Origin: Pocillopora damicornis
Lineage: Eukaryota
Direction: 5' to 3'
DNA length: 64,000 nt
Assembly: GCF_003704095.1 (NCBI RefSeq)
Contig: NW_020845583.1
Coordinates: 62,001 to 126,000, forward strand
Within the stretch, counting starts at the first letter, position 1, and each line of letters starts with the position of its first letter. The notes beneath the pieces were generated by a model that had not been told where the DNA came from, searched no databases, and was given only the letters and a program-made list of their open reading frames with translations. Of this stretch, positions 1,844 through 24,151 are shown piece by piece. The position numbers and the translations under genes were made by a program.

Positions 1844-3076
1844 TTAAAGCAAGCCTAAATCTCGAAGATTATGCACTAGAAGAAAATCATCCACTTGTTT
1901 CGAATTATTTCTACACAGTGCCGACCGTCTTCGTTTCTCCCTCAACGAAGTATACGGAACATGCATAGAAGCTTTTGGAAGTTCCTCTCTTGCGTTTTCA
2001 AGCGAGTCGATTAAAATTTGAATTTGTGGCATTCCTTGCAGAGAGTATGCAGTTTCTTCGCTTTGGTCTCGCTTCTCGTTTGAAGCGGTTTTTTCCTTAG
2101 ATTCATAAATACTTATTGATGGCGGCGAATTTGATCGCTGCTCATTCAAAACATGTATATCTTGCTCAAATGACACAGATGAATTGACATTCAAGTCTAT
2201 TTCGCATCGACTTACAGGTCGTCTGCCATTTGCAAGTGTTGCAACCGATAAACCTATTCTTTCTGATTGTCTTGTGGCTGTAGTAGAGCCTTTTCTTCTT
2301 TCGGATTGAATTCTGTTATTATTCTTTTCGTAGGCATGATGTTCGCTTTGTAAACGTAAGCTGTTTGAATTAAATCTCTTTTGAATTTTACCCGAAAATT
2401 CCTCACTTCTGATACACGTGTGTTGTACGACATCAGCTCTTGATTGCGAGTCAATAGGATATTGCCCACCTTCTGTTTTTGAACGCTGCCTTATTAGAAG
2501 TGTATTGCAGCCTTTACAACTGGATTTGTCACTATCAGATCCCACAGGGCTACTGAAAGATCGTTGAGGGATTCGCGGTTTAGATCGAAACCGATCTTTC
2601 CCCAGAGTTTCGCGTTTTTCAGCTAAGCAAGGCCTACCAACCACTTGTAAATGCTTATTATATTCACCGCTCGAGTCCTTTCTTTGCTGAGCTACGAAAC
2701 TGGAGAAGTCTACGTTTTTATGCGATTTCCCCTCACTGCTTTTCCTGCTTGTATCGTGACTAGCAGCTGACCCGTTCGACGACGCAAATGAAAATCTACG
2801 CGCGTTGCTCAATCTTCTCCCATGTCGTGCGTTATCCTGTATCGGTGGTAAAACAGAAAAACGCGTGAAAGTACCCATATTGTAGTTGAGATTTAACAGA
2901 GGAATGTTCTCCTCAGTTTCAGATTCACCATTGCTCTTTTCTAGCTCGTCATCGGAAAAAACGGTCTTCATGTTTGGGTTTTCGTCGCCTAACGGCCTGT
3001 CTTCTGTAAGCTTTGCATATTCAATTTTCGGTAAAAACAGTTTGTTTCCTTTGGGTATTTGCGACCTGGTGTTCAT
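1844..3076 (-). CDS. Intronless uncharacterised protein, 410 aa from the first ATG (MNTRSQ...), Ser/Arg-rich and probably disordered
   Basis: 1.3 kb stop-free frame in AT-rich DNA. The ORF-track start at 3142 is GTG; the first ATG is at 3076. No folded domain recognised; many RRxS/RxxS motifs. Confidence 0.65.
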   Translation of the reverse strand: MNTRSQIPKGNKLFLPKIEYAKLTEDRPLGDENPNMKTVFSDDELEKSNGESETEENIPLLNLNYNMGTFTRFSVLPPIQDNARHGRRLSNARRFSFASSNGSAASHDTSRKSSEGKSHKNVDFSSFVAQQRKDSSGEYNKHLQVVGRPCLAEKRETLGKDRFRSKPRIPQRSFSSPVGSDSDKSSCKGCNTLLIRQRSKTEGGQYPIDSQSRADVVQHTCIRSEEFSGKIQKRFNSNSLRLQSEHHAYEKNNNRIQSERRKGSTTATRQSERIGLSVATLANGRRPVSRCEIDLNVNSSVSFEQDIHVLNEQRSNSPPSISIYESKEKTASNEKRDQSEETAYSLQGMPQIQILIDSLENAREELPKASMHVPYTSLREKRRRSALCRNNSKQVDDFLLVHNLRDLGLL

Positions 3077-6000
3077 GGCGATAAAACTGTGGTCTTTTTG
3101 AATCTGTAAGTTCAATACTATTTGAGTTTCATGACGAACCACAAAAGGATTTTTGCCACTTTCCTTCCAACCTCATTTTACGTGTTTATAATTCCCCCGA
3201 TGCACCATCTGTTTTGTAACATTATGTTGATCAAGTAGATCACGTGGCACTCTTTTAATGAGCAGTTGTGAACAAGACGCCACAAACATAAATGAATTCG
3301 GCATTCGCATAAAGGTTAAGAAGAGAGCTTCTTCCCTATTCGTCAAAATAATCTATAACAAATATTTCAGTTCACTGTTCAAGTTTGCACGCAAACTCTC
3401 GTCTTAAATTGAAACGAGAGTGAAGTTGCATCTCGTTTTGATCGAAGTTTCCCCGAGACGTTTTTGAATAATTTTTACACAATTCTAGTGTGTTTCGTCC
3501 CATTTTTTCAAAATTAAATTTAAACGAGGATTACTTACCGAAAACCCGATTAATTAATTCATTTTAAAATTTTAATAGTATGAATAAGCATTGGCTGACC
3601 ATTCGAGTTTGGATTTTGGAAATACACATCAAACGATCATATGAACCAAAATCAGTGATAAGTGATTAAAATAGGAATTTTTTTAGTATTGAAAAATTTT
3701 TGGGAGATGCATGACATTGTTTTTAAAGTAATGGTGAAGTCAAATATGGTATTCTGAAGCTTAAAGTAATTATAAGTTGTGCTAAATGTATTTATACGTG
3801 GATCGACAGCTCTGCCTTTTGTCAGTAAACTGCTGAACTACGTTTTTGTTACTGATGATTTTGACTGTCTATATTGACCGGTAATTATTTAGTTAATGAA
3901 GTGCGCTAAATCAAGTATTTTATCATTATCATTATGCCGCTTTTTTTTCTTTGAAAAAAAAGAAAAAAAATCGTATCATCCCCTGAAGCTATTATCTACA
4001 AGATAATATCTTATATTACCAGCGGCGGGTCTAGAAGTTGAGCTGAGGGGGTCCCCGGTTTTTTTTTCGCTTTCCCTGCCGGCTTTTGTTCCTTTTCTTC
4101 CTTGATGTATTCAATAGTGCTTCCATGTTCAAAGATGGTTTTTCTTCTCAGATTAGTTACGGCTAATGGTTGTCATGCAATTAATATATTGAGAAACGAT
4201 AACAAAAAAATCACTTTACAAGGTTAATTTCACCTTCATAAATCTAAGCGTTTCTTTTTTAAAGCAGCATTTAAAACTGTCATTCCGTTCACCACGGAGC
4301 CAAAGAAGCTAAGAACATCCCCATTATTTTGGGACACCTCACACAATACGAAGTATGCTGTCAAGCGGGTCTCAATGGGGTGATGGTTTTTACGGCTAAC
4401 AGTTAACACTATTCCATTGTTGTCACCATTAAATTTGTCAATTTGTACGCCTAGAGGCTAAATTTTTTAGTTCGTTTTACAGCTATCGGTTTACCCCATT
4501 AAGACCCCCTGTTAGGCCTAAAATTAAACCATTCTATAGTGTATGATACTGATTTTTACGTGTTTACGAATATCTCTCAATGTTTTCCACTGAAAAGTAA
4601 CAAGAAAGTCAAAAACTGTCTATAATTTATAATCCATTTCTTAGCCAAAAATATTATAAGTAAGTGTAAATAAAATTTGCCAAATTGGTTTTGCTCTACC
4701 TGAAAGGTAATATAAAATTTAATCTAAATATATATATATATATAAATATATTATCTTTAATCCACGTTCTGATTATGCAAATCAAACTCATTTATTTGTT
4801 GTTATGATGGCTCATAACAGACTAACAATTCAACAAAAACAGTAATAATTTATTACTCTTTCAATGAAAGCTATCCCGCTGACTAGGAAAAGAGTTTGAT
4901 TGACGATAGTCGATATTGAAAAAGATTTCGTGATATTTAATTTTTTTTTGGATTTCAAAAAAAAAAAGCTTGCGGATGAACTTAACATATTTGTTAAAAA
5001 TTAAATTGTTCTGCCATTAAAGCTAAAAAAAATCCAAAATAATTCCTATTGTTGTTGTTTTTTCTTGTTTGCTTATTTCAATTTCGCCCTCTCTTCGGTC
5101 ACATGAAAGTATGGACCGCCTTTTAACTTGGAAGAAGAAAAATAGCAGACAATAAAAGGTGTGACAAATGAAATTTTCCACCCTTTTAATGCGAGACAAA
5201 CCCAAAATTATTCGTGGTTTTTTTTTTTTTTGGTTTCAATTTTGCTATCACTTTGGTCGCATGAAAGCATGGATCATTTTTCAACTTGGAAGCAAAATAT
5301 GGCAGGTGGCCACTTATCCCTAAATTGAAGGCGTGTTCGCTTCCTGTAATTGAATTCTTGCCACTTTAGATAAATAATTTCATTCAAGCGGTTCTTTTTA
5401 AAATAGGAATGCATCAGGAGAAAAGCAGGATCGATTAGACTGTCGAAAACGTAAATGTTCACTCTGCAAAGTGCATCATTCGATTACAAAATAGGATTGT
5501 ATCAGAATATTCCTTCATTATACATACAAACAGGTGCAATAATTTTATTCAGTAACCTCACCCAAAGTGTCCTGTAATGGTCTATAATGAAATACAACCG
5601 TGGGATATTTTGCGTCGCTTGCAAGCGTGAGAAAAATTAACTAAAAATTGTAGTCGAGAAAGGTCACTTTAAACCGCATATTAATTGATACAGCTGGATC
5701 AAAAATGGAATCAAAATAGGGCATACGGAACTCACATGGATTGGGCAGGAAAGGAAATGTACCTCTAAAGCCATTTCGTAAAGACCAATTTTTACTTCAA
5801 CTGTCTAATACCGTAGTAAATATGCAGGAGATATCATCCTTCCGCCTAATCAAATTAAAAATACCTCTCCAGCTGATAAGCACGAGTGATTAAATAGCCA
5901 AACCATCCACAAATCTTGTATAAATGATAAGCCATAATATTAATGGTAAATGAGCTGAAAACGCCGCAGGTTTGAAATACGATTGATAATCCGTTTTAGG

Positions 6001-6265: not shown

Positions 6266-7210
6266 TCATGATGTGATTACTGAGTAGAATCCGCTCCTAG
6301 CAGTTCTCAGAGATCCTGAATGTGATCTGCTATCCTTTCCGAAACGAAACACGGCTCTTGTCTCGTTCTTGATATCCTGTTTTAGGAATGCGTATACAAT
6401 CGGATTAAGAACTGAGTTAACCATAATTAGCAGAGAAAAGAATATTTGGACATCGTCAGGGACTGCACAAAGGTTATACGGGGCTTGACAGAATGTGACG
6501 TAGATTTCTGTCCCGTAACATACTACGAATATAGCAACAACTGCAACCACTAATTTTACCGTTGACGATTTCAACCCAATTTTAACTGGTGCGTTCAGTA
6601 TTCTTGCAGAGTTTGCCGCCACGTTAAATCTAACCTGAGTCAACAGAACTGACATCTGCTTCGAAACTCTTCGGGCGATGAACAAGATATGCGAGGTTGT
6701 TACGATAAGGATTATCGTTGGCACAATTTCAAACAACAGCGTATACATGGTGATTATTACGAACTCTGCCTGGGCAGAAATCTCATTGTAATACAGTTCG
6801 TATGCCCATCTAGCGAAGATGAGAACACTCGGAACTCCCCAAGATGCCACAATGATAGTGATTGTTTTTGCAGTGGTCATAACGTATACGTATCTTAATG
6901 AATAAACGATGGCGATATAACGTTCCACAATCATCGCAATCATCGAGAAGGTGGAGGCTTCGATGAAAAAGCTGTAGAAATTAAAGCGAATGCTGTTGTT
7001 ACATGAGTGAACGAGTATGTTGCAAACAAAAGATGCTGGGAAATATCCACAAGTGACGCCCAGATCGGCGATTGCCAAAGAAAGAACAAACCAGTTGGCT
7101 GTTGTTTGTAATCTTCTTCTTTTCACGATGATGAAAATAATCCAGGTGTTTCCCAGGAAACCGAAAAGAGTTATAAACCAACCAACGACCCAAAACCAGT
7201 GAAGAGCCAT
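6266..7210 (-). CDS. Intronless rhodopsin-like (class A) GPCR, orphan, 314 aa
   Basis: Seven hydrophobic segments with GN (TM1), LAIAD (TM2), ERY (TM3), W in TM4, P in TM5, NPIVY (TM7) and a helix-8-like FLKQDIK. Confidence 0.93.
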   Translation of the reverse strand: MALHWFWVVGWFITLFGFLGNTWIIFIIVKRRRLQTTANWFVLSLAIADLGVTCGYFPASFVCNILVHSCNNSIRFNFYSFFIEASTFSMIAMIVERYIAIVYSLRYVYVMTTAKTITIIVASWGVPSVLIFARWAYELYYNEISAQAEFVIITMYTLLFEIVPTIILIVTTSHILFIARRVSKQMSVLLTQVRFNVAANSARILNAPVKIGLKSSTVKLVVAVVAIFVVCYGTEIYVTFCQAPYNLCAVPDDVQIFFSLLIMVNSVLNPIVYAFLKQDIKNETRAVFRFGKDSRSHSGSLRTARSGFYSVITS

Positions 7211-9115
7211 CCTTATTTTGACATCAAAGGTTTGATTCCTGAGACGATTTCATCACAATGCCTCAGAAATGAATAAATACCTACGTTTTCCCTCAAAATT
7301 ATTACACCTTTGGGTTAAAATTGTCATACAATGTGTAGATCGTATTTTTCTTTCTCCGTTTCTAAACGGTAGCTTATCACGACGTTATTACCTAAGAAAG
7401 TTTCTTCCAATTTCATTGAGAAACCTGCTGAAAGCTTACAAATAATTATGATCAAATTGAGCATAAATTTTAATTGTTAATTCCCGCCTTTTCAATGAAC
7501 CATACCTCCCCGCATTTCACGAAGGCTGGAACAGTTGTTCAGCTGAAAACAATTGAAAAGGAAATGATTTTCTTCAAATAATCTCCTCCTTTGCGTGGAT
7601 GTGAAAAGTGTTATTTGACAAATGACACTATTTGTTAAATAAAAATGCATAAGTCAAATCTCGTTTCATCCCGAAACATTTGTTAGACCCTAACAGAACG
7701 TTGCTGGACAACAGGGAATTCATTTTGCATGATATTTTGGGAAGAAGCAGCATACAGGGAGATGTTCTATTTTGTTCTCTTTACACACACAAAAAAAACC
7801 CTTGCTTCTAAGTGGCATGAAACAATTAACTGTGCTAAGGTCCGAAATTTGCATTAACTTAGGATAATCAAACAAACCTACAGGTAGAACAAAGGTAGAC
7901 AACTACAAAAGACGAAATTATTTACACAAAAATATTTTAAAAAAAGCGTTGAAGCGGTTATACATGCCATTTGAAACGCTAGTTAGTTAAAAATAGTTAC
8001 AACGATTGCAAAACCATGATAACAAAACTGTACAACGTTCTAGTAATAAATGAACTGACTTAAATTAAATCTTTTCTGTTATTATGATTTTAAGTTACCA
8101 GAAATTACATTGGGAAGTTATTATACAGAACTACATAAGGTAGCTTTATCTTCTATCTTTCGAAAAAAAACAACAACGAGAAGAAAAAAAAAAGGAGATC
8201 TCTATCCTTGACCACTTGGAGGTCATATCCATTGTAACGAGAATTTTTCTGCCAATTGGCGATACTCATTTGCATTTAGCTATAATATGATATTGAAAGA
8301 CGCTGACACCCTACACACCCGCGCAGTTTATCAGAGAGTTGAAACAAGCGTGAAGAACAGATATATTAATTTAGTTCGTCTTGGTCGTAAAAGATGTCAA
8401 TTTTCGCTATTTAACCCCACACTCAAAACGGCAATACCTCAGCCGGTAGCCTCGAGGTAAATGAAGAAATTTACTTTTGAATTTTTGTCTTCTCACTAGA
8501 ATAGAGCTGATATCTTGAAGACGGGGAGTTGGCGTGTAATCGATAGGATACGCAGATTCGCTCCGACAAGCAAGTTTTAAAGGATCGATGTGCAAGCGAT
8601 GAAAGTTTAGAAATGGTGTGGAGAAAAGAGGAAAATATCTTAAGCCACAATGACAAATGACTGATCAAAACCCAGCCGAGCAATTACCGATCGCATACTC
8701 TACCGCTAAACTAAAGCGAAGTCCTTGGCGAGCGACGAGGCTATATTATGCTTAGTTCTCGAGGGTCCTAACGTGTACTAAGATCGACATTCAGTGCTTC
8801 CAATCTCGATAGGAGTCAGCTCCATAAAAAAAATAAACTTTGTCAAAAAAAGAAAGCTATTAAATCCTTTTCGAGGAAGAGTGTGCACTCTTCCCCTGTT
8901 GAAACATTTTACTGTAATTTTCTACCGCACATTGAGAAGCAACTGTAGGGTTTAGGTCAAACTCCACCTCCTGTGTTCTGAGGGTAAAAAGTCAACAGAA
9001 AGGAGAGAATTGGAGAAGAGGCCTGGAACTAGAGTAATCCAATATGGCGGAGTACTTTGGCTATCACCTGTGAAATTCAGGTTCATAGTTCCAGATTATT
9101 CTAGGAATAAAAAAT

Positions 9116-12100
9116 ATGACTGATTCATACAATCAAGAAATTGCTGGAAAAGAGACGGATTCAACGACAACATGGATTTTGCTGCAGATAGCTGATTCAG
9201 GTATGAGTATATCAGCGAGTATGTAACTTGTAATTGGAAAGCTGATGTAAATTACGTGCAGGCTTAAAAGCGGTGTAATTTGTTTAACGAAAAAAAAACA
9301 TTATTAGTATTATTCATTACAAGTTATTTTCAGGAAAATAGTGAAACAATACTACTTTCAAAGCGAGAATTCAATGATATTTTCAAGATTATGTCGGTAA
9401 ACAGCTGAATAGACGTCAAGTGTTCCACGTTGAAGGCTATAAAAAGTAACATTTTAAAGCTAAGATGAACATATTACCTTGCCTCAATACCTTTCTTTGA
9501 TAACGAGGTGAAATTTTTGACGGGATATGAGATGTTTGACGTTTTTTCAAATGATTTTCGACTAATTTTTAGACAAAGCAGGTTAGTAACAAGTACACCA
9601 TGTTCACGGGTTTCGTTGCAGCAGCAGCAGCGGCAACCGCGTTTTCTGGCGCGTAATTTAGGCGGGAATTTTCAGGCAGATGTGAACCAACTAGATTCAA
9701 TTATTTCAGTATACAGTACTTTAAAACCAGCTTATGGTCTCGCAAATTCCAGAACATCAGAGGAAATTTAAAACAAAAACTTATGAAACATTGTAATCAA
9801 GCAGACAAGTAAGGAGAATAAAGAAAAATATCAGTTAGGGGATTGTAAGTTGATTCAACACCAAATTCTCCAAACTAACATCACAAGAACTTTATGGTAG
9901 ACATTAAGGAGAATTACTTATGAGATCTTGGGAGTTAGATGGTTAATGAAAGACTGAAACTAATTGCCTTACAGTCTTACAGTTTTAGAGCATTAACACA
10001 TTTCTTTGAGGCAATTATGTTTGAAAGAAGACAATTGTAAAATTGATAATAATCATTATAAAAACATCTCTAAGGAAGGTTAAAAATATCCAACTTTATT
10101 CAAATGATGACTGGTTGACATATGGCTGAAGTAACAGTTACAGTAACAGTAACAGTAACACAAAACTTCTGGTGAGCAGAAAATATATATCAAAATTATC
10201 TTCTCTAGAATTATATCAGTTTCATCTTTTGATTGGCAGCATTTCCTACTGGAGGATTCTCACATAGTTTTGGATTTGAATCTGCAACAAAACATGGCTT
10301 TGTAACAGAGTATAGTAAGTATGAAACAGAATGCAGTGTTCAGTAAATTATAATATTGGAGTACACAATGTAAATATACGTTAGCAACTTCAAGATTTAT
10401 CTTTGATAGTAAAGAGTAGGTTTTTGTCGCTGTTGCTATGTTAATTTTTTTGTTCTTTCTTTTTAGGTGCATTCAAAGCTTTTTTGTTCTCTTGCCTTCA
10501 AAACACAGGTAATACTCGGTGAAAGCTACCATTAATGAATCAAAGGGAATAATTCAATCATTTTATCATTTAAAAAAGGAAACAGTTCTTTGCACTTACA
10601 CATATTACCTATTTTGGCAAGTTGTCTTAAATGAAACATTAATCCAAAATTTCTATAAAATGTTTTCATGCGCTGTCTACTGGTGATGCAATGTTATAGT
10701 ATGGGCTGTGATCACATACCTCCTCCCTTGTTTGGGAGAGCACATTTTTTTTGTGACCACTTAAATCCTATGGAAATTCAGGTTGTCAGTTCACTATTTC
10801 TGATTTTTATTCAGTTAAACCTAGTTTAGCTATAAATATTTTGCTGGTGTGAATAGGTAGGTATCAGACCAATAGAAGAAGTTTTATGGTTAATACTCAT
10901 TTTCATTCTTTTCAGCTGTGCTTTTAACTACTAGTTAGGCAGAGGCCATGTAAAGCAAACACTCCTTTCTCTCTCCTCACCACAAAAAGCCGTTGATTTG
11001 CCTTTTCTCACAGCCCCAATGTTTTGTCCTCTACATGTAAAGCTATAGTTGATCTAGAGAGCTAACTGAAGTCCTTCATTTCAAATCCTTTAGCATCATT
11101 CAGTCTCTCTTTTGTCAATGAATCGCACAAGAATTGCCATGATGTTGAGAGGATCAAAGAGTTGGATGGAATGGTTCAAGCTTACCTCAGTAACCATGTA
11201 GCAAACAGAGCAAGCATCAGGCAGGTCAGTTATACATTATCTATAATAAATCTATTATACATTATTGATCAACAATAAAGCTCGCTACATATCTTTATTT
11301 TGAGGTGAATAAGTTGTTGATTCTGTATAATTTTTCTTTATTTTATCAACTAAAAAAACTGGCATTTGAATAGTAAAACCTGTTTAGCATAAGAACATGC
11401 ATTTTTACCCCCAGTACTTATCTGCATATGTGTAATTAACCATTTCTTCCCAGTGGTGATTAACCTGTTACTTCTCTCTATAATATCCATACATTATCCA
11501 GCAAACAGGTAATGAGAATACTCAAACTAATCTGCTAGTTTTTATCTTGATTTAACTCCAAATTCTCATGAATAATTTACAAGAAAATGTGTAGCTCGTA
11601 GAGGGGAGAGTTAGCAATAGATCTTGGGGGTCAAAGGGTTATTAGTGTTTAGGAGAATTAAGCTATCCATCAAGCATCTCCCACTCCTCTTACTTAAGGC
11701 ATAATTTCTTAGACCACTAACCCATGTAAGAAAATTTGAGAACTTCAATTATCTATTTGTTAAGTAATATGTAGCTTACAAGTCTCAACTGCTTGTTTCT
11801 AAGATTTTCTTTTTTATAATTTCTTTTTATCAGAAAAGCTATTACTGGTCATTAAAAGTCCCAAATTACTAGGCCAATTTAAGTCTCTCAGATTGAAACT
11901 TCTAAAAGGACATGATCAATTGTGATGTGTCACTACATTACAAGTATCTAAGCTTTTGCGGTATCGTTGTTTATCAGGGGAACTCCTTACTTGACACAGC
12001 TTGCAAAACATTTGGAAAACAAGAAATGAAAAACTTACAGGTATGTTCTAAATGACAAATGTTTGTAGTTATAAAAATACAACTTACATTTCTGCGTGGC

Positions 12101-13904
12101 ACTGAGGTAGTATGTGTCTCTGGCAATGTTTTTTCCTTTCTTGAGCCCATTATTTATGTTTTAAAAGAGAAAGAAAAGTAACAAGGTAAAGAACATGATA
12201 GCACCTCACTATTCCGCCTTGAAAGACAACACCCCTACTTAATAGGAATTTTATGAAGACAAGTTATCAACCTTTCACGTCTCTGCAACAAGGATGAAAA
12301 TCACGAAGAGTTTTTTCCTTCAAACTGTAGAAGAACGTTGTAAGATAATCAAGAGGTGAAAGTGCCCTGTCAGTAGTACTGATAGTCAACAAACATCTGT
12401 AGTTCTGGGGAAAATTTCTGGTTTAAATTTCAATGATAAAATTTCCGTCTCATTCCACGGTTCATGAAAGGTGGAATCCTACTTCCTAACCCTCTCCCTC
12501 TAGTCCACTCCTCCTCGTAACTTCCGTCCGACCCTCTCAGCGCTGGGAAGCACCGAGATAAGCTGCGGCTAGGTGGTCCTGAATACGCTCCAGAACAGGC
12601 CTTACCTACAACTGCTTTATTTCAGGTCCAACTCGAGAACAAATGCCTCTTTGGTCACTTTGCCGTTGTGTTTGGCTTCATGTGCGGCATGTTAAACCTC
12701 TCTGTGGTCCAAACACAACAACTTTTCCTTTTCTCGACTCTCCGAACGGTAATTGCCAGTGCTGTGAGACTTGGTAATATCGGACCGTTACAGGTACTTA
12801 TAGAACGTCAGGTTTTGGGCAGCTACGAATAACAATACAAGATAAATATATGACAATAGGTGATATCTACATTTGTCGCGCTCGTTCTTTTCATCCCACT
12901 TTCATATAGTCGTCCTTTACAACCGCTTTTCCCTTTTTTTGCACGGGGAGGATGTCAATCATGATTTTCCCTTTTCGTTAGTGGAGGGGTGGGAATCGTT
13001 GTGTGAAATTTTCCCCCCCCCCTTCCAAAAAAGAAAAAGTTTCGACAAAGACTTCACATTGGAGAAAACCTGTGCAGTTAAGGACAAAGTCAATCAGAGA
13101 CGGATTCTGGAAAATCCTAGGTGTGCTGAAATATAGATGCAGAAGTTACACATGAATATGGCTTTGCATAGTCTGTGTTGGCGTCTTGTCATACGTTCTG
13201 AATCCCAGTGGTGTTAACAGAAAGGATGCCACGACTACAGCGTATCTTAGTTATGGGAAGGAATGTCCAAGGAATACGTAACGTGTCTTACAATTACATG
13301 TTTTGAATTCCGACGAGAAGGCTATAGATGATAATCCCTTGAGGATTCAAACACTGGCACGGAATGCCCGTATAAGAAGTGAGCATAAAAACTCAAGGTC
13401 TCTTGTGTACGGTTATTGTTGTAGTTGCAGCTCCGCTAATTATACTATATTTTGATTCATGAACTTTAGGCTCAATCCTTACAATTTGAAATGCAGAAGA
13501 CAGCAGAAGAAATAAGGAAAAAGTGAGTATCGTGAGCGGAATACTGGTCTGAACACCAAACTGGTGGACGCAACACAGCCTTTGTTTTACCTAGGTTTTT
13601 GGACTTATGTTTGTGAAGGGATTTTCGACTTAAGAGTTACCTTTATTTGGATTTTTACTGTGTTTGACGCCTTTCGCAGCAGTGTCTATTGTTGTAGAAC
13701 GAGATCAACTACCACAACAGGTGTTCAAACTAGACGAAAACCAGGTCATCTGACCATTAGCCCACTTATTTACCTGAACTGTTGTTTTTATACATTCCTA
13801 GGTTCGAAATGACCACCGTGGAGGAAGCAACAACAACAGCCCCCGTTGCTGACTTTCTTCAGGGTGCTCACGACAACCTGTTTTCAAAACTTTTCTACTC
13901 GTGA
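9116..13904 (+). CDS. ureF: Urease accessory protein F (eukaryotic type), 8 coding exons, 239 aa
   Basis: Exons 9116-9200, 10240-10314, 10467-10508, 11094-11224, 11978-12040, 12626-12793, 13470-13522, 13802-13904. All introns GT-AG with matching phases; 720 nt in total. The translation has UreF motifs LLQIADSAFPTGGFSHSFGFE, LSNHVANRASIRQGNSLL, HFAVVFG, RTVIASAVRLGNIGPLQAQ and C-terminal QGAHDNLFSKLFYS*. Confidence 0.93.
11436..11642. mobile_element. piggyBac-type (TTAA) MITE in ureF intron 4, reverse orientation relative to the 27786 copy
   Basis: TTAACC...GGGTTA ends; internal sequence is the reverse complement of the 27786-27996 element. Confidence 0.65.
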
Positions 13905-14422
13905 AAAGAGGCATGGAAATGTCGTTAATTCCGAATGACTGGTCGTCAATGTAGCACCTCTAAATGAAACAGGGCGAGGTAAAAGAACTGCAAGTTATGT
14001 GAAGTTTTCGTGGTGAATAACCAGAGATCTCTACACGTTTTGTAGGGGCTGTGATCGAAGCAATAACGTGTCTCGAGCGCCGGAAAGCTATAGCACGCGA
14101 GGGCTACAATGCGGTCAACAAGGCACTGATCCATTTGGGTAGTCCACATAAATGTAATAAAAACATGGAAAACTGTGTATGACTTGCATCAAATACCAAA
14201 CTTGACTCTAATGACCCTGATGGTGACTTTCGCTCAGGTTGATGAAGCGTCAGTGGCTAATATCGACAGCAGTCAGAATACACGATAATGCCGAACTTTA
14301 TTAAATCTCAACTCTGGAAATTAATCTTTACAAAAATTTACAAATATTTAAATCCGATTGCGCGAAAAAGCTATTCGTTAAACTATGTTCATAAGTCTTA
14401 GTCCATCTTCTATAATTTTTTT

Positions 14423-16190
14423 TTATATCACAAAGTGCTCAAAGTTTTCGTTTGTGAAGTCGCTTTCGTCAAAAGACAATGAAGACATGGAATAAGTCAG
14501 AAGTGGCCTTCCCGAGTTATCTGACGCTGCCCTTTTTCGGAGACCCGGAGAGGCTTCGTCTCTGTAATACGTCTCCGAAGACTTTTCGGGAATCCGATAA
14601 AATGGACTGATTGGTGAACTCGGAGAGGTGTCGGGAAGACTGATCTTTCGATCGATTGGAGACACTGGAGGCGGGCAATTCCTGATTGAGTTGAGAACAC
14701 CTCGGAGTTGTACAAACTGCTTCATAAGGTTCTGGTCTTGCTGCTTGAGAAATTTCTGTTGGATGAAAAATTAAGTTAGAGAAATGTGGATGCTTGCTTT
14801 CTTGACAGTTGAAATTTGAACATGTGTATTCCTAGAAGTTACGGGAAATGTTTTATATCTTAGCTCAAACGAATGAGATGTTAGAGATAGAAGCGTTGAT
14901 GGAGCTAAGATTCTCAGAGCAGAAATTAGAGAAAAATGCATATAAGTTGATTCTTGTTGCCTACAAGCAGACGCTGCAGGACGCGCGTTTCTCCACGCGC
15001 GGAAGGACTCGAGACGAGTCGAGACAGTTATACTCTTTGCAGCGCATAGCTTAAGGCTCGTACTTTCCGTCGGGCGAAGGCACACTCGTGCTGAAACGGT
15101 TCCTGATCCTCTTCGCGGGCTGTGTTTTCTAGAACAGATACATGGAATATCTTTCTCTCCATGGGTTTTGTTTATTTGTCTCAATCATTTTTTTTTTCTC
15201 AGCGGGCAATCACCCCGCCCGCAACGATTCAATCGTTACCGCTAAAAGATCACAGTTCGTCAAGAATTTCAGGCAGCGTAGCATTTTTTAACGTTCAAGT
15301 ACATAACACTTCCAAGCTACTATCCACTGAAATTGAAGATGGACAACAAGGTGACCCCTTACTTCAAATTCATCTATTTCCTCAATTTCCTGCTGTGCGA
15401 AGATCTAATATTTATTTTTCAAAACCTTCAAAATACAAAAGCTTGTCTGATATTTTCAAGAGCTAAGAGAAACATTTCTGCTCCGCCCTAGTGACACGCG
15501 CAATCATAGACTTCAGTAACACAAACACCACAGGAATTTTTCGAGCAGAATCGATTGATGCAGGGTTTATTCCTAAACGCACGTGTCTCCATTGAAAGGT
15601 CATTTACTTGGGGCACGGTGGCGGGGAATAATTTAGGCTATTATTATTGTGGACAGATAACATCAGTAGAAAAATATTGTTCCTGTGAATGAAAACTATT
15701 ACAGTCGGGAGGAAAGTTATCAAAGCTTAATTGCATGTAGATGAATCATGGAAAGAAAAACATTTGCGACTTAGTAACCAAGATGTCTTTTACGATATTA
15801 CGTGTAAATCCCAATACCGAAGGGGCGTTAATCTCAAGTACAGCTAAATGAATTTAATATATTGAGAGACCTTTATTTATAATCTCCGCGATTAGCCATA
15901 ATTTTTCTTTATGGCACGTATCCAGATTATCTTCGAGTATGACATTAGAATTAAATAACTTGTTAAGCGCTTACGATTTCTTTCACAATCCATTTGATTG
16001 CCGCGTCTAGGTCTGTTTTGCGTTCGTGAAACGTCTTCAACTTTCGCTCTTCTTCATTGAAACAAAATGCGGGTCTTTCCGACTCCATAATCTCATCAAC
16101 AGAGCTGATCACAACGCTCGGCTGAGTTTCTGAGTCCTCCTCCTCGCTCGTGCTCTCCGTAGATTGCTGTCCTATCATGAGGAAAGACAT
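14423..16190 (-). CDS. FAM167-like coiled-coil protein, 2 exons (16190-15975, 14755-14423), 182 aa
   Basis: A phase-0 GT-AG junction joins ...LDAAIKWIVKEI|KFLKQQDQNLMKQFVQLRGVLNSIR, resembling the FAM167 pattern (WLRxELxEMRxQDxxLxxQLxxLRxxI). Minus-strand AATAAA at 14297-14302. Confidence 0.72.
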
Positions 16191-19100
16191 AATTTTGTAA
16201 GTTTAGGATTAGAGGTAAGCCCTGGTGCAACGTACACCGAACTATGAAAATTCCTGTGTTGACTGGATCGCACTAAGTGATAATTACCGAAGCGGTAAGT
16301 CTGTCCTTTCTAATTCTTTGTGCAAATAAATGATGAGTTTGACAAATGATGACCCTAGGGTTCTAATCAAAATGACATATCAGTGTTGACTGAAGAAGTA
16401 CTTGCCTATGAGTCAGCTTCGTGTTTCGACGTAATTGCTCTCTTGTTACAAGTTATGACGATTTTTATTATTGTGTCAAAACTTTTCTGCAAAGTAACCG
16501 GATTTAGCTAAAACCTGACGTTTATTCTGGGCACATTAATTCAAATTTGACGTAATTTAGGTGCATCAGGCGTGACAGCGAGATCCGGCAATAGACACAA
16601 GCAATGTTTGTATTGACAAAAAGCCACAATGATGTTTCAAATTGTGTTGTGTATCAAACCTTATCTCTCCGACTGATCGCCGTAATCTGACCACAGCCAG
16701 TAAAAATAGATCGATAACTTTGCGTTCCTCTATCTCCAAGATTTGATCAATATGCAGCCTCTCCTTACAATTCCAATATATCTTGAAATAAGCAGTTGAT
16801 AAGAAAAGACGAACCTATCAGGCTATAAACGCTATCTTTACGACCAAAATTTCATCGTAGATTTACAATCCAACGTATCGCAGCTTCAAGAGAGAAATAA
16901 TACAATGATTTTTAGAGTTAATCGGCCAAGATTCTGTTGCGTTATTCAAGTCGTGTGCTTTGTCATAGCTATGTGGTCTATTCTTAGTCCCCCCGGACCT
17001 CAGATCGTTTTTTCGGAACAGTGTTACGCACGGGTCGTAGTAGCCAGGGAGGGGAAGGTCCTGAATACCCCCTGCCCTGCTGGTGAGAAGAATTTTTAAT
17101 AAAAAAACGAACAAACCTTGAAATTCAGGAGGCGAAAACGCGCGTGAACCGAGGAATCAACACGCATGCATAGCAGAGGGATCCCATCACTAACAACTCA
17201 TTTATTCTTATTCTTCAAAATCTTGCTAGGGGTAAAACACAGCGTTAATGTCGCGAAGACAGTCGAAAAGGTACCCTTGATAAATCCCAGTGCGACTCCC
17301 AACCCCCTTTTTTCAAAAAATCCTTGCTACTTCCCTGGACATCTCTTTAAAAAGCCCTACTTTGAATTGAAAGAAAAGTCGTTCTCGGATTTCATCCTGA
17401 ACTTATTCTTCTTAAAAGCAACTATTCAACTTGCCCTCCAGTTCAGAAAAGAAAGGACGTAACGCCGTCATCACCTTAATTACATACCAAGCCAAAAGAC
17501 GGAAAGCACGCAGAAAACATAACAAGCAATTAAGAAAAAAGATACTTTGTAATCATTTTACCGGATGGCCACCCAGACTTGGAAATACAAGAATGAGGGA
17601 CTTGCCTCCCAAACGTGGCCGCAAAGGTTTCGTACACAAAGTGACCTTGTTGAGCAGGAGCTTAGGCCGCTTGTGGTTAAGAAAGGAAATCGTTGTTGAT
17701 ACATGAGAAATACAACCTACCGACATATTGCCCTTGAGTCAAATGTAAAGGTCATGGGAAGAATGGAAATGATCACAAATTCAATAAGCTTCTGATAGTC
17801 AAACAAATACTCCTTGTCAGTACCGTGGGAAATATATAAAGAACAGTATGGAGAATGAAGGGCGTAGGCAGACAAGCGTTTGGGTTTCAAGTTTTACGTC
17901 TGTGTAGAGGAAGGGAACTAACCCTTCCTAAACAGCCACGAAATCACTTCAGTCAACATACAAAAGAAAAAATTTAAATTGACTTCAGCCACTGGAAAAT
18001 TTTTATTAGGGCGGGGTTTGAGGATCAAATGTTACGTATGAAGCATATCCCGCAATCACTTGAAACGCTGCAAATTACAGCAAATGTAAGAAATCAACTA
18101 CCGTGTCTGATTGTTGACGTCAATCTCATAAGGTTGTGAGCTCGCGAATCTTCTACAGAAGAAATGCGGCTCAAAGGAAAACAAAATGAAATCGTTTATC
18201 CCCATTATTCGTCGTGTAAAGTTATGTCTCAAACGGGCCTTTGTTATCTGTATTCAGCAACTTCGCTCGAACAGACGGTTAGCGCACGATTCGGCTAGTC
18301 AACTTATCAAGACAGTGTATAGTGTATCTGATTAACTTCACTTGATTCAACGACCAAACCCCCCCCCCCCCNNNNNNNNNNNNNNNNCACCTCAATCTCC
18401 AATGAAGCAAAAGGAAGTTACGCGGGAAAGTGAGGTCGGAAAACAAAATGGAGATTAGGCTTTACATGGTCAGTTTTAGCCGCCTTGTTTATTGCATAAT
18501 GGCTGTCGTTGAAAGAAAATAAAACTTTCATTTGCATTACAATTGGCCTTACCATGAAAAGGCCATTGTCTGAAACAGGTCTTTGTTGTCTGCCTTCAAA
18601 GGGCTGATGCTCGAAACTTCGACTACGCAAAATTCGCCAGGGCGATCAGTGTCTCCCTCGATCAAGCTCGAGTAAAGAGTATGCTAAGTAAGTCTTCTAG
18701 CAAATCAGTGCCCCCCCTCTCCCATAAGGAGAAACTAGAGTGGCGAGTGGGGACTGAAAGCAAGATGAATGTTAGGCCCCCGCAGGAGCCCATTATCCCT
18801 GACGTGAAGGTAAACATTACACATGAGTGAAGATGACTTTAAATTAGTGGTATCCTGCTGTGAAGAAACGCTCTTGCTGAAGTAATAATAACCTATTATC
18901 GGAACATTGAAGATAGGAGATGTTTAGCATGATCCTGGAGTAAAAGTAGATAAAAATAACGATAAAAAAAAGTCTTCTAACGAGCCCCTCATCGAACCCC
19001 ATACCTTCAGACTCGCGCCGGATGCTCCACCACAGAGCTACAGCTACGTTGCTACGATCAACAACGTCAAGAGACGAAATTGTGTGGGTAAATAGAAAAG

Positions 19101-19599
19101 TAAAAATGGTAAATGATGGTATATCTGAACCTGCTCTAACGTCGTAAGTGACCCCACTCATCTCGCAGAAGCCCGAGCAAAAACAGGTCTCAAAACGAAC
19201 ATAGATGGCTGGGCACCTCCCATTTTCGAGGCTCTTTGAGAGCCTGGGTCCGTCCAGTTATCGAAGGTAAAAACCGTTTATTATTTACCACCCAAGGGCG
19301 GAGGGGGGGTTTGAATGATTTTGGCTATGTCGCAATGAAAACTACCTTATCCCACCATAAGGCTCTCTAATATTCTTGTGATCTCACTCATTGGCATGCC
19401 CTTTTTATACCCTGTCGGCGACCAGGCCTTTTCCGATTGTGCTCGGCAACTTTTGAGCAACGTTTGACGTTTGGAGCAACTTTTAGCAGTTCTAGGAACC
19501 TCGAGTAATTTTGCATTTTTGAAAAATTTTTGAGGAAAATGTAGATTTAGAGCACATATCAAGCTCGAAAGACTACTTAATGATACATTAACATACTTC

Positions 19600-19826
19600 A
19601 ATAGGCCATTTTATAGTTGTGTACTTACAGTTGCCAAGCCTTTGATTTGGAGTGAGGCTGAAGTTGACCATGTTGTGATACATATGAGACCAGTATTTAG
19701 TTAGCATGATAACAAAGTCATTTACATTTGAAAAGCAGCAAGGTTTGTATCATAACAAAGTCACCCTTAGCCTCATTCCTGTTCAAAGGCTTGGCAACCA
19801 AGCACGCAACTGTCAAATGAACTATT
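19600..19826. mobile_element. Palindromic MITE (~225 bp, long imperfect inverted repeats)
   Basis: AATAGGCCATTT..AGTTG..GTTGCCAAGCCTTTGA pairs with TCAAAGGCTTGGCAAC..CAACT..AAATGAACTATT. Confidence 0.7.
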
Positions 19827-21497
19827 TATGTAAATTTCTTACATGTTTATCAACCTTTCGAACACAAATGAACCATGTGTTTTGTTCCGTTAGACCTAAG
19901 TGTATCCCTAAATTTCGCCCATATTTGCACATCAGTCTTAAACACGTTTCAAGCTATTTTTATAGACCGATGAGAGCAATTATAAGAGGAAAGAAAAATA
20001 AAGCTTTAATTAACATTTCTATGAATATATCCAAAAAATTAGTCAGCAATTTGTGAAATTTAGATGGCGACTTTTTGAATTTTTCGCAATTTTTTATAGC
20101 CTACTTGTAGCCGTACCCTCCCCCTGCCAAGATGAAACNNNNNNNNNNNNNNNNNNNNNNNNNNNNNNNNNNNNNNNNNNNNNNNNNNNNNNNNNNNNNN
20201 NNNNNNNNNNNNNNNNNNNNNNNNNNNNNNNNNNNNNNNNNNNNNNNNNNNNNNNCCCCCCCCCCACTATTCCTAACTGTCATTTATGGCTCAAAGATGA
20301 AGTAAAATACCAAGAAATCTGAGTGAATTGTTTCGACCCTTGTTACTTTCGCAACCATCGGCCTATTCTTCTTGCCGATTTATGGGGGGTCGTCGATTTT
20401 CCGAACGCTCTATCATCGACACAAACAAATTTACTCAATGTTTTTTTTCTCTCACAAATGGGCATATCGAAAAATAAAAAGGAGAAATACGTATATGTTC
20501 CATTGTTATTGCTGAAAAGAAATAAACTGCTTGGGTCACAAGTGTCGCCACGTGTGCGCTCTTACTTTACATTGGATTAGTTGAAAGTGTCACGCAATCA
20601 TAGAGCAAATATCTCCGTTTTCTACCGTTTTCGCGCGACAAAGAAGAGATATCATTTAGTTGAGAGTGAACTCAATACAAGACCCTTCTTACCAGGGCTT
20701 TTTTCCCCAACAGGACGGCGAACAGCAATTTGATGTCACTGAAAGCCCACACGGACCCACTTTTAGCATTCTACCCTCAGCAGGCGAGTATAGTTACCAC
20801 CTTTTACAAAGATATATCAGTTTTCAATACAGCGGTGTGTTTATCCATTCATCAATCAAAACTCGGTATCAGTTATCAAGCGTGGTTTCGCAAGTGTAGC
20901 TTAAAAGGAAATGTATAAATTGTCGTCACAAAGCTATTGACGCAGCTGCTCCCTGTCACGCGAATGAACAAGGAAAAAATACAAGTACCTATGGACAAAT
21001 AGATCTTACTTTAAAACATTTTTATTGCCACGAAGACAGGTATCAAAACCAAAAACCTACAAAAAAAAAAGAAAAACTGTAACGGCTCGTAATAACAGCG
21101 AATCATTTGAAAAATGCCTAAAATCGTGACATTATCAGATACAAACTCACTCGAGCTCATTAATGATTAACGTTTCATTAAACACATGAGAGGTGAAACC
21201 CTATTAGTATACATAATGAATACATGGCTCGCTCTTTGACAGAATATAACGCTTTGTTTGGCGATGCTTTTAGGGTTTCAAGCACTTTAGAATCATTATC
21301 GTCAGTAAAACTACCAAAAATAACAAGAGTTATAGGCGTTACGAAGAGATGTGTTACAATGCTTAGATATCTTACGCCAATGGAGTCACTACTTGGACTG
21401 TATCTTGATCTTGAAGCCTTTAAAAACAAATTCAGTTACTGAGATAGTTGGTTGAGAATACTGTTATGGGCAACAATTTTTTTACGCCGCACATCGA

Positions 21498-21827
21498 TCA
21501 AGACCGAGCGATGGACATGGCTCCAGGACTGCCTTTTACTTCTTGGGCTGATTGCACCAGCATGCAAAGAGGACAACAGCAAGTCGCCAGAATATCATTC
21601 AGGAACGTGCCATCGATGCCTTTCTGTTCCCGGATCTTAGAACGGATCTGCGCCATGAAGAAGATGTTTGCCAGCGGAACAAAAGTGGCCAGTCCACAGA
21701 GCAGGCAACTGTCTCCGACCGCCTCGGCGTTCTTGCCAGCCGTGTAGCAATGACAGAAGTAGGTAACGAGACATGTGCCACAATCATCAAAACAACCGAA
21801 CAATCCGTGAGACCACTGTCTTGCCAT
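21498..21827 (-). CDS. PLAC8/cornifelin-family cysteine-rich protein, 109 aa, single coding exon
   Basis: WSHGLFGCFDDCGTC...FCHC...RSKIREQKGIDG...DILATCCCPLCMLVQSAQE is the PLAC8 domain signature. Confidence 0.92.
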   Translation of the reverse strand: MARQWSHGLFGCFDDCGTCLVTYFCHCYTAGKNAEAVGDSCLLCGLATFVPLANIFFMAQIRSKIREQKGIDGTFLNDILATCCCPLCMLVQSAQEVKGSPGAMSIARS

Positions 21828-24151
21828 GGCGAATCCAACTGAATCAAGTTCAGCGAAAAAAGATCGTTAAGATACAGGAGTTGAACAGATGAATAAACAG
21901 AGCTGTGATCAGCTTGCCACGCCGTAAATTAGAGACAGCGCCTACCGCCCCGGAAGTCATACCTGCTTTCTCAGAATGGCAGCACCAGCCTATTGATTGA
22001 CATATGCCACAATGAAAGCCAATCGCAGTTTCGACGACGTCATAGTAAAGTTTGCCACGGATTCTTGTAATAGGGGAGTTTATATAGTTAAGGCGGTGAA
22101 AATTATTTATTCAGCTTTAAATCGAAGCCAAATTAGCATATAATATGAGGAAAAAAAAAATACTCGGCAGGGTGCTTAGCAAATGTAATGTTTAAACAGC
22201 TTACGGGGTTCTTAATCAAATTTATCGTTCGAGCGAATTTGCTTGCAATCGTTTAAATTAAAAAAGGAGATTTTTAGGTGTGAAAGTAATAATTTGAAAA
22301 GAGCAGAGTCGTCACAACCGACCGTTGAAAGAACACAAGTTTTGCGCTGCGCATCTTAATTATATAAGATCGTGACCTGTTTCGATTAGTATCCCTAAAG
22401 GTGTGGGAGGGGAGACTCTCTTACAAACTGACGAGATTATTTCACATCAGGAGAAAAGTTTGGTTGTATATACGCTCTGAACTGTCTTTACGGTGATATC
22501 CTAAAACCGTAAAACATTTTTCTTTTTCAAAAAAGAAACAAAGGTGAGAAATAGCTTAACGGTGATGTTTCTACCTCCCTCCCACCCCTCCCCCCCGATC
22601 GATCCACCCCAGTAATCATGAAGTATTCGATACTCGAAGCGAGCAGAGTTGATTAACCACAAACAATACCCCTCGATTTGTCATGATTTAGAAAATATCC
22701 GTGTGCGTCTTTGAAAGGTCACTCGAGGTAGGCTACCCGCGACGAAAGCCACAAGACTTGACGCGATCTTAAATAAAGTTGTCAGAATTTAATATGACGG
22801 GAACTTTTGGGAATTTCAAACTGAGAGATAAATTAAAATGCAGAAAAGCATCTCAGGCTTGTATTGCACCCGAAGGAAATCGTCTGAATAACAATTAGCT
22901 TGTTTTATTCTGTCCGGAAGCATTACTGAACCCTGCTCTCAGTTGAGAAGGCGTCGTTCTGTTTCGTTCATGTCCAGCTTGTTGCTTTGTTTTGGCAACC
23001 TTAAAAATATCGCCGAGTTTAAGTGCCACTTTGCTCATGTCAGGCTTTTTTTTCGGACAGGCCGTTTGATAATTTATTAGCGTCTTTTGTTCTTTCGAAA
23101 CAGGAAGATCTGAGATCCTTTCAAGAACAGGAAGAAGCCACTTAACGTTTGTCAAGTTCAAGCGATTGGTATAAGTTTTAGCTCGGGCTACGTGCTCTCT
23201 GCAACAGTAGGCGTTCAAGGCAGATGACAGATGTTTCCGTTTCGGAGTTTCAAATGGTCACTCTCATATGAAGGGACCCCGTTGCACGAAAGAGAGAATA
23301 TATCTCGTGAGCCTGCTTCTTTCGGAGTTCAGCACACAGGGGCGTTTTACTCCAATTAGGCAGAGATATTGCATGCAACTATCACACGCACCTTACAAAT
23401 AAGAACAATTTAAAGTTGAAGCAATATTTCCGCTTGCCGTTTCGTCGTTACTTTTTCAGCGACGGGTGTAAATTAATTTACTAGCACAATGATAAATCTC
23501 TTCAGCAACATTTCTGAACGTATTTATAATATTATTCTCTTATTTCAAATTAAATTTCCGCCTTTATTTTTTCATACAGCAAAGGACACAACGGGGGTAA
23601 AACCACCTTAGAAAAAACACACATAAAACTCATTACTTCCCACGATACAACCGATCATAAATGCTTTCCACCAAAGAAAGCAGAGATGGAGAAGGAAAAT
23701 CATTAGTACCATGAAAGTATTACGCAGGGACAAAGAATATCGTTCATATATCAAAGTACTTAAATCTTTCAACTAAATATTTCCCTATAATGAAAAAATA
23801 GTCGCATCTCTTAGTTTACTATTTTGAGCGAAAATACTAACTCGTGCGAAAATACCGTACGCGTACCCTCCCCATGAAATAATCTATATATATATCATAT
23901 CATACAAATTTTCTGAAATCGGACATTACTGACGATGAGAGCGAAGAGATTAAGGCCTCTCTCTCGATATTTCATTTTTTTTTGGAGGAAATAGCTTTTC
24001 GTGATAAGTTCAAAAGGTGAACTTCATGAACAAATCCAAAAAATGTAATAAATAAAGATTTATCACGTCGCAGCCCTCTTTTCAAAACCATAATTTACGA
24101 TGTTTCAAATGATTAGTTTTTCCCAATTTTCATGTAAAGATTTCAAACCGC

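What the first reader, a model, noticed from the sequence alone, without database searches (positions are those of the whole stretch)
9116..13904. Spliced, animal-encoded urease maturation factor UreF, invisible in the ORF track
Seen: eight short exons joined by seven canonical GT-AG introns give an intact 239-aa UreF. The gene sits among clearly metazoan genes, and its introns hold the same piggyBac-type MITEs as those genes, arguing against bacterial or algal contamination. Established: UreF acts with UreD(H) and the GTPase UreG to insert nickel into urease; the system is typical of bacteria, plants and fungi, absent from vertebrates, and only patchily reported in invertebrates. Inference: this animal has its own Ni-dependent urease (urease, ureD and ureG would lie elsewhere; none is in this window), able to make NH3 and CO2 from urea, with possible roles in host-symbiont nitrogen recycling and calcification. 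Whether this is already annotated for the species I cannot tell.
Basis: partly seen in the sequence, partly recalled or inferred. Interest (0 to 1): 0.85.

Follow-up and report, generated by a model that had tools for sequence, protein, structure and literature searches.

The report
Coral host's own spliced ureF gene
This is a real, expressed eight-exon gene of the coral animal (Pocillopora damicornis) for UreF, a helper protein that loads nickel into urease; the gene is ordinary and already catalogued in many invertebrates, but the deposited model for this species leaves out its most conserved exon.

Summary
Eight exons (window 9116-13904, + strand) joined by seven GT..AG introns give a 720-nt frame of 239 codons plus a stop. 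Assembled RNA contigs from four independent polyA/oligo-dT RNA-seq studies show all seven splice joints at the predicted bases (one run lacks the intron 6 joint).

Exon 6 alone passes the Pfam UreF threshold. A natural 239-aa transcript-derived protein, 97.5% identical to the model, covers the whole UreF profile. Its predicted fold matches only solved UreF structures.

The gene belongs to the animal:
- Its closest relatives are other corals, Nematostella and many invertebrate phyla.
- All seven intron positions and phases are shared with amphioxus.
- Its introns carry a piggyBac-type MITE dispersed across the genome.
- Its neighbours include a rhodopsin GPCR and a stathmin exon.

Urease, ureD and ureG are present in the same genome, clustered on another contig. 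The scan had already noted that cluster on other DNA.

Nothing here is new in kind. The gene is deposited as pdam_00010470, ureF is named in Nematostella and Acropora, and coral host urease is in the literature. The one useful correction is that the deposited 183-aa model skips exon 6.

The parts
9032..9115 (+). 5' UTR (minimum extent)
   Evidence: RNA contigs that carry the exon 1/exon 2 joint start at 9032 (X2) and 9040 (X13) (table 8). Contigs cannot fix a true start.
9116..9200 (+). ureF exon 1 (ATG; 85 nt)
   Evidence: Joint 9200>10240 seen in 4 of 4 RNA runs. Identical to pdam_00010470 residues 1-28.
10240..10314 (+). ureF exon 2 (75 nt; the FPTGGFSHSFGFE motif)
   Evidence: An exon of the same 75-nt length occurs in Nematostella and Branchiostoma.
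10467..10508 (+). ureF exon 3 (42 nt)
   Evidence: A 42-nt exon is shared with Branchiostoma and Lingula.
11094..11224 (+). ureF exon 4 (131 nt)
   Evidence: A 131-nt exon is shared with Branchiostoma, Holothuria and Lingula.
11978..12040 (+). ureF exon 5 (63 nt)
   Evidence: A 63-nt exon is shared with Nematostella, Branchiostoma and Holothuria.
12626..12793 (+). ureF exon 6 (168 nt, 56 aa). It is the most conserved part and is missing from the deposited model pdam_00010470.
   Evidence: Pfam UreF 43.1 bits, E 6.8e-11. It is the only UreF hit in the genome. Joints to exon 5 (4 of 4 runs) and exon 7 (3 of 4 runs). Absent from P0198.
13470..13522 (+). ureF exon 7 (53 nt)
   Evidence: A 53-nt exon occurs in all four other animals examined.
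13802..13904 (+). ureF exon 8 (100 nt plus TGA; conserved C-terminal tail ...LFSKLFYS)
   Evidence: A 100-nt last coding exon occurs in all four other animals. The tail aligns to the H. pylori UreF C-terminus.
13905..14126 (+). 3' UTR (minimum extent)
   Evidence: RNA contigs X1 and X13 run from 13802 to 14124/14126 (table 8). An AATAAA lies at 14156-14161; it has not been shown to be used.
11436..11641 (.). piggyBac-type MITE in intron 4 (about 205 bp)
   Evidence: At least 3628 first-look candidates on many contigs, 81-84% identical. An alignment of 12 copies shows sharp ends, inverted termini CCCTTTAACTCCCA.../...TGGGAGTTAAAGGG and flanking TTAA on both sides. Copies in the window lie at about 26.5, 27.8, 57.5 and 58.5 kb.
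9796..9946 (.). Related repeat fragment in intron 1
   Evidence: Copies in the window at about 27.8, 40.8, 52.7 and 57.7 kb. Summed RNA contig depth reaches about 34,650 here, as expected of a dispersed repeat. Its right end resembles the MITE end and is followed by TTAA.

Best explanation
Window 9116-13904 (+) is the single-copy nuclear ureF gene of the coral host, which is Pocillopora damicornis judging by identity to pdam_00010470. It is transcribed, spliced at seven GT-AG introns and present in polyA-selected RNA. It encodes a 239-aa all-helical UreF. By homology with the bacterial, plant and fungal systems (inferred, not shown here), UreF should pair with UreD, dimerise, and dock the GTPase UreG. 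That complex lets nickel and CO2 be placed into the active site of the host's own single-chain urease. The urease gene lies with ureD and ureG on another contig of the same genome. The gene was inherited vertically from the common ancestor of cnidarians and bilaterians.
For: - Gene model and reading frame.
- All seven splice joints in RNA contigs of four studies.
- UreF Pfam hit on exon 6, and the only such hit in the genome.
- Natural proxy protein P0180 (239 aa, 97.5% identical) scores 94.5 bits over the full profile.
- P0180 aligns end to end with H. pylori UreF (residues 18-238 against 31-253).
- The AlphaFold model (pLDDT 83, pTM 0.82) matches only UreF chains, with TM 0.65-0.80.
- Nearest relatives are corals, Nematostella, amphioxus, a hemichordate, a holothurian, molluscs, a brachiopod, ticks, a mite and a tardigrade.
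- The animal clade has SH-aLRT 98 and the coral sequence nests among scleractinians.
- Seven of seven intron positions and phases are shared with Branchiostoma, and six of seven with Nematostella, Holothuria and Lingula.
- A host-wide MITE lies in an intron.
- Urease gamma, beta and alpha, ureD and ureG exons lie on C3382 between about 730 and 758 kb.
- Literature: urease and an accessory protein are listed for the Acropora digitifera genome (PMC3750612). Urease protein was detected in Montipora host proteomes (bioRxiv 10.1101/2024.04.02.587798).
Against: - No biochemical evidence for this protein exists.
- The RNA evidence comes from assembled contigs of holobiont or metatranscriptome libraries, so tissue, life stage and expression level are unknown.
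- I did not reconstruct the urease, ureD and ureG genes as full models, so their intactness is not shown.
- The exon-wise search found no dedicated nickel importer (NicO, HupE/UreJ) and no UreE; this is a weak negative.
- The residues aligned to H. pylori dimer-interface R179/Y183 are Q and F here, so the interface details may differ.
Confidence: 0.93

Rival explanations
1. The locus is contamination or a recent horizontal transfer from the dinoflagellate symbiont or from bacteria.
For: Urease systems are common in bacteria and in Symbiodiniaceae (PMC13255410). The RNA libraries that hold the transcript are labelled coral or marine metagenome.
Against: All seven spliceosomal introns sit at positions shared with amphioxus, and six of seven with Nematostella, a sea cucumber and a brachiopod. 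The sequence nests among scleractinians inside an animal clade. A MITE with thousands of copies across the same genome sits in intron 4. A rhodopsin GPCR and a stathmin exon are neighbours. Bacterial UreFs are only about 24-30% identical.
Confidence: 0.01
2. The gene is transcribed but is a decaying or non-functional relic, so host urease is not matured by it.
For: No activity data exist. No UreE or nickel importer was found. The deposited models in Pocillopora and Acropora lack the core exon.
Against: The frame is intact and 239 aa long, the same length as in three other coral lineages. Columns that are invariant or nearly invariant across 33 UreFs are kept. The fold model is confident. The gene is spliced correctly in four studies. 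The partner genes are present. Coral urease protein and a nickel-dependent urease effect are reported.
Confidence: 0.04
3. The main product is the exon-6-less 183-aa protein, as in the deposited annotation, with a function other than classical UreF.
For: The deposited model pdam_00010470 and the A. digitifera isoform X2 lack the same 56 residues. Skipping exon 6 keeps the reading frame, because the exon is 168 nt long.
Against: No exon 5 to exon 7 joint appears in any of the four RNA runs, whereas the exon 5-6 and 6-7 joints do. Transcript-derived 239-aa proteins form a cluster of 38 members. Exon 6 encodes two core helices and the stretch aligned to the H. pylori dimer-interface helix (PMC3792862). 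Contigs drop rare variants, so a minor isoform is not excluded.
Confidence: 0.02

Closest known systems
Pocillopora damicornis hypothetical protein pdam_00010470 (UniRef name: urease accessory protein UreF), 183 aa
   Same: It is the same gene, 100% identical over all 183 residues, and maps to exons 1-5, 7 and 8.
   Different: The deposited model skips exon 6 (56 aa). Its Pfam match therefore stops at profile position 85 and scores 33 bits, against 94.5 bits for the 239-aa form. RNA contigs support inclusion of exon 6.
Nematostella vectensis urease accessory protein F (XP_001637079.2, 246 aa)
   Same: About 50% identical and colinear, with the same N-terminal motif and C-terminal tail. Six of the coral's seven introns are shared.
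   Different: Nematostella lacks the intron between the 42-nt and 131-nt exons. Its genomic neighbours are different (aconitase, EGF, RING and UCH genes).
Branchiostoma floridae urease accessory protein F-like (225 aa)
   Same: 48% identical. All seven coral intron positions and phases are present.
   Different: It has one extra intron that splits the exon homologous to coral exon 6. It lies head-to-head with ureD and near ureG. The coral ureF is on a different contig from ureD, ureG and urease.
Helicobacter pylori UreF (PDB 2WGL, 3SF5, 4HI0, 8HC1)
   Same: Same family and same all-helical fold, aligned end to end. The FP.G..HS.G.E motif and the C-terminal tail are conserved. The tail is needed for UreG recruitment in H. 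pylori (PMC3792862).
   Different: Only about 18% identical. It is encoded in a bacterial operon together with ureE. The dimer-interface residues R179/Y183 align to Q and F in the coral protein.

Membership tests
UreF (Pfam PF01730) | Profile match above the curated cut-off | tested here: met
   Exon 6 by reference scored 43.1 bits against a cut-off of 23.3. The whole-genome six-frame search gave 41.9 bits at the same place. The natural 97.5%-identical protein P0180 scored 94.5 bits over profile positions 5-151 of 151. The joined translation of the window was not sent to any search tool.
UreF (Pfam PF01730) | End-to-end colinear homology with experimentally characterised UreF | tested here: met
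   P0180 residues 18-238 align to H. pylori UreF 31-253 (E 4e-8), and all four PDB hits are UreF. Animal UreFs align colinearly to all eight window exons.
UreF (Pfam PF01730) | All-alpha UreF fold | tested here: met
   The AlphaFold2 model of P0180 has pLDDT 83 and pTM 0.82, with 11 helices and no strands. The Foldseek top 10 are all UreF chains (TM 0.65-0.80, probability 1.00), and the next hit has E 0.6.
UreF (Pfam PF01730) | Conserved N-terminal FP.G..HS.G.E motif and C-terminal tail | tested here: met
   The exon 2 and exon 8 translations carry the columns that are invariant across 33 UreFs: Q24, D27, S28, P31, G33, S38, G40, E42... S239.
Urease maturation system (urease + UreD + UreF + UreG) | Partner genes present in the same genome | tested here: met
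   On contig C3382: urease gamma, beta and alpha exons at 742768-754165 (-), ureG exons at 735301-736985 (-), and ureD exons at 730932-732066 (+). Full gene models and intactness were not reconstructed.
Urease maturation system (urease + UreD + UreF + UreG) | UreF binds UreD, dimerises, recruits UreG and is required for urease activation | not testable with these tools
   This needs pull-downs and a complementation or knock-down assay. No complex prediction was run, because coral UreD and UreG have no reference sequence without joining exons.
Urease maturation system (urease + UreD + UreF + UreG) | Nickel supply (UreE metallochaperone or a NiCoT / HupE-UreJ importer) | tested here: not met
   No exon-level hit for UreE_C PF05194, NicO PF03824 or HupE_UreJ PF04955. 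From general knowledge, plants also lack UreE, so this does not argue against a working system. The exon-wise search is insensitive.
piggyBac-superfamily MITE (intron repeat) | TTAA target-site duplication, short terminal inverted repeats beginning CCC...GGG, no coding capacity, high copy number | tested here: met
   The 12-copy alignment shows TTAA on both flanks and inverted termini of about 16 nt in an element of about 205 bp. There are at least 3628 first-look candidates. No autonomous piggyBac partner was sought.

The most novel reading that the evidence does not exclude
Animal urease genes may descend from one intron-bearing ancestral gene cluster of urease, ureD, ureF and ureG that is only partly preserved today. 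Amphioxus keeps ureD, ureF and ureG side by side. The coral keeps ureD, ureG and urease side by side. The coral ureF in this window would be the member that left the cluster. A second possibility not excluded is that skipping of the in-frame core exon 6, modelled independently in Pocillopora and Acropora, yields a dimerisation-defective UreF that damps urease activation.
Probability: 0.25. Interest if true: 0.45.

Novelty: already known. Interest (0 to 1): 0.2.

Why it matters
A host-encoded UreF shows that the coral animal itself, and not only its algae and bacteria, carries the machinery to mature a nickel urease. That bears on urea-nitrogen recycling, on nickel dependence and on the reported link between nickel, urease and calcification. 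This is already accepted in coral genomics and physiology. The practical gain here is modest: a corrected 239-aa gene model for P. damicornis, whose deposited model lacks the core exon; firm evidence of vertical animal ancestry from conserved intron positions; and a pointer to partial clustering of urease genes in animals.

Tried and rejected
- Exon-by-exon Pfam scans hit only exon 6. The other exons (13-43 aa) are too short for HMMER's filters. NCBIfam gave nothing for any exon.
- The representative search with exon 6 returned mostly prokaryote-style ORF calls that run through exon 6 and its flanking intron (P0001, P0004, P0174). I did not use these as proteins.
- The look-up of encoding contigs had no record for P0198, P0188 or P0181, so I could not compare coral-to-coral synteny or intron positions.
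- No NicO, HupE/UreJ or UreE_C was found. This is a weak negative.
- A paper search for urease + ureG + Nematostella found nothing. I found no open paper devoted to animal ureF.
- The careful maximum-likelihood tree did not finish. Only the quick tree with SH-aLRT support is reported, many of its rows are unnamed, and it still contained the intron-read-through pseudo-proteins P0174 and P0176.
- The inverted-repeat finder saw no inverted ends in the degenerate intron 4 copy. The ends became clear only in the multi-copy alignment.
- Contamination or horizontal transfer was considered and rejected (see the rival explanations).
- Joined step: the joined 239-aa translation was built only inside scripts. 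It was used to check frame and length and to compute pairwise identity to database proteins. The natural protein P0180 stood in for it.
Full report
**Observation.** Window 8900-14100 was read and the model rebuilt by script. The eight exons are 9116-9200, 10240-10314, 10467-10508, 11094-11224, 11978-12040, 12626-12793, 13470-13522 and 13802-13904 on the + strand. The seven introns measure 1039, 152, 585, 753, 585, 676 and 279 nt, and every one is GT..AG with a pyrimidine-rich acceptor. The exons sum to 720 nt, which is 239 codons plus TGA. The longest open frame here is 103 aa around exon 6, so the gene cannot be seen as an ORF.

**Note on method.** It was built only inside scripts, to check frame and length and to measure identity to database proteins. 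Searches were made exon by exon by reference. They were also made with a natural database protein, P0180 (239 aa, a cluster of 38 transcript-derived sequences). P0180 is gap-free and 97.5% identical to the model.

**Transcription and splicing.** Twenty-two public runs hold part of the stretch, and fifteen of them are on record as RNA. Contigs from four RNA-seq runs of four different studies, made from polyA, oligo-dT or cDNA libraries, were laid on 8700-14400. All seven predicted introns appear as GT..AG joints of exactly 1039, 152, 585, 753, 585, 676 and 279 nt. Six are seen in all four runs and intron 6 in three. Contigs that carry the joints reach from 9032 to 14126. No exon 5 to exon 7 joint is listed. 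One run matches exon 1 without any difference. Three runs share five substitutions there, which fits closely related Pocillopora lineages or alleles. Because these are contigs, they show presence and splicing but not level, strand or transcript ends.

**Family.** Exon 6 alone scores 43.1 bits on Pfam UreF against a cut-off of 23.3, and it is the only UreF match in the 234-Mb genome. P0180 scores 94.5 bits over profile positions 5-151 of 151. It aligns from residue 18 to 238 with H. pylori UreF residues 31-253, and every PDB sequence hit is a UreF. An AlphaFold2 model built on 33 UreFs has pLDDT 83 and pTM 0.82 and is all-helical. Its ten best PDB matches are all UreF chains (TM 0.65-0.80), after which the E-value jumps to 0.6. 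Full-length animal UreFs align colinearly to every exon of the window.

**Species and existing annotation.** A search with Nematostella UreF returned 'hypothetical protein pdam_00010470 [Pocillopora damicornis]', which UniRef names urease accessory protein UreF. It has 183 aa and is 100% identical to the model. It maps to exons 1-5, 7 and 8 and omits exon 6. Its Pfam match therefore ends at profile position 85 and scores only 33 bits. Exon 6 encodes two core helices. It also encodes the stretch aligned to the H. pylori helix that bears R179 and Y183. Mutating those residues abolishes UreF/UreH dimerisation, UreG recruitment and urease activation (PMC3792862). The RNA evidence supports the 239-aa form. 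The gene is therefore already annotated for the species, but imperfectly.

**Host origin.** Five lines of evidence agree.
1. *Relatives.* The nearest named relatives are Oculina, Montipora, Acropora and Nematostella. After them come Branchiostoma, Ptychodera, Holothuria, several molluscs, Lingula, ticks, a mite and a tardigrade.
2. *Tree.* In a quick maximum-likelihood tree all named animals fall in one clade (SH-aLRT 98), cnidarians group together (94), and the Pocillopora-type sequence nests among scleractinians (99). The nearest named outgroups are an oomycete and a marine protist transcript, while Rubrobacter lies far away.
3. *Introns.* I derived exon structures for four other animals by exact spliced mapping of their proteins onto their loci. 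All seven coral intron positions, with the same phases, occur in Branchiostoma. Six of seven occur in Nematostella, Holothuria and Lingula. The oomycete gene shares none.
4. *Repeats.* Intron 4 holds a 205-bp element with at least 3628 first-look candidates across the genome. An alignment of 12 copies shows flanking TTAA duplications and inverted ends of about 16 nt that start CCC and finish GGG, which is the piggyBac-type MITE signature. Copies of it and of the related intron 1 fragment lie elsewhere in the window.
5. *Neighbours.* These include an intronless rhodopsin-family GPCR (6266-7210, - strand), an EMP70 exon and a stathmin exon.

Contamination and recent horizontal transfer are effectively excluded.

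**The rest of the system.** None of the other urease genes is in the window. All lie on contig C3382:
- ureD exons at 730932-732066 (+)
- ureG exons at 735301-736985 (-)
- urease alpha exons at 742768-748215 (-)
- urease beta exon at 749980-750087 (-)
- urease gamma exons at 753009-754165 (-)

Together these indicate a single-chain, intron-split urease next to two of its accessory genes. I did not build full models of those genes, so their intactness is not shown. No UreE_C, NicO or HupE/UreJ exon was detected, which is a weak negative.

**Mechanism.** Shown here: an intact, spliced host transcript in polyA-selected RNA encodes a protein of the UreF family and fold, and the partner genes are present. 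Inferred from the bacterial, plant and fungal systems: UreF binds UreD, dimerises, docks UreG, and so allows GTP-dependent nickel insertion into apo-urease. The host cell can then split urea into ammonia and CO2.

**Known or new.** Urease and a urease accessory protein were listed for the Acropora digitifera genome in 2013 (PMC3750612). Urease protein is detected in Montipora host proteomes. A nickel-urease-calcification link in corals is published (Biscere et al. 2018, cited in PMC6235957). RefSeq names ureF in Nematostella, Acropora, Branchiostoma, Lingula and a mite. The finding is therefore correct but already known.

**Verdict.** The novelty is low and the interest score is 0.2.

Noticed in passing
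G000 contig C3382, about 730.9-758.5 kb (loci L002-L013): Urease (gamma, beta and alpha exons, - strand), ureG (- strand) and ureD (+ strand) lie within about 25 kb of each other. A further UreD-like exon sits at 758371-758475 (- strand) beyond the urease gene. It matches the same profile region (positions 44-78) as the exon at 731935-732066, so there may be a second ureD copy or a fragment.
   Followed up: partly
L027 (Branchiostoma floridae, CM022899.1) 6566-23896: In amphioxus, ureD (6566-9576, - strand) lies head-to-head with ureF (10001-13896, + strand), 425 bp apart. A cobW-family gene at 18382-23896 (- strand) has exons 86-97% identical to the coral ureG exons. This is a ureD-ureF-ureG cluster in a chordate. 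Nematostella, Holothuria and Lingula ureF have no urease-related gene within 10 kb.
   Followed up: partly
window 12626-12793; proteins P0198, P0203, P0220, P0221: The deposited Pocillopora model and Acropora digitifera isoform X2 both lack exactly the 56 residues of exon 6. The tick 185-aa isoforms lack an overlapping 44 residues. This is either a recurrent gene-prediction artefact or a conserved in-frame skipping of the UreF core. No such joint was seen in the four RNA runs.
   Followed up: partly
window 9655-10036 and 11374-11564: The MITE stretches collect summed RNA contig depths of up to about 34,650, with many chimeric joints and loose ends. The repeat family is therefore embedded in very many polyA transcripts of the holobiont libraries.
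   Followed up: no
window 6266-7210 (-): An intronless 314-aa rhodopsin-family GPCR (7tm_1, 79 bits) lies about 1.9 kb upstream of ureF and is transcribed divergently from it.
   Followed up: no
window 1844-3142 (-): A 432-aa open frame has no Pfam match at E <= 0.01. It is the longest ORF in the window and remains unexplained.
   Followed up: no
L030 (Aphanomyces invadans) 10001-10709 and 12008-12716: The oomycete carries two tandem 219-aa ureF genes 1.3 kb apart. Each has a single intron, at a position not shared with animals.
   Followed up: no
window 9110-9143: Three of the four RNA runs share five substitutions in and just before exon 1, while the fourth run matches the window exactly. 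This fits several closely related Pocillopora lineages among the public data.
   Followed up: no
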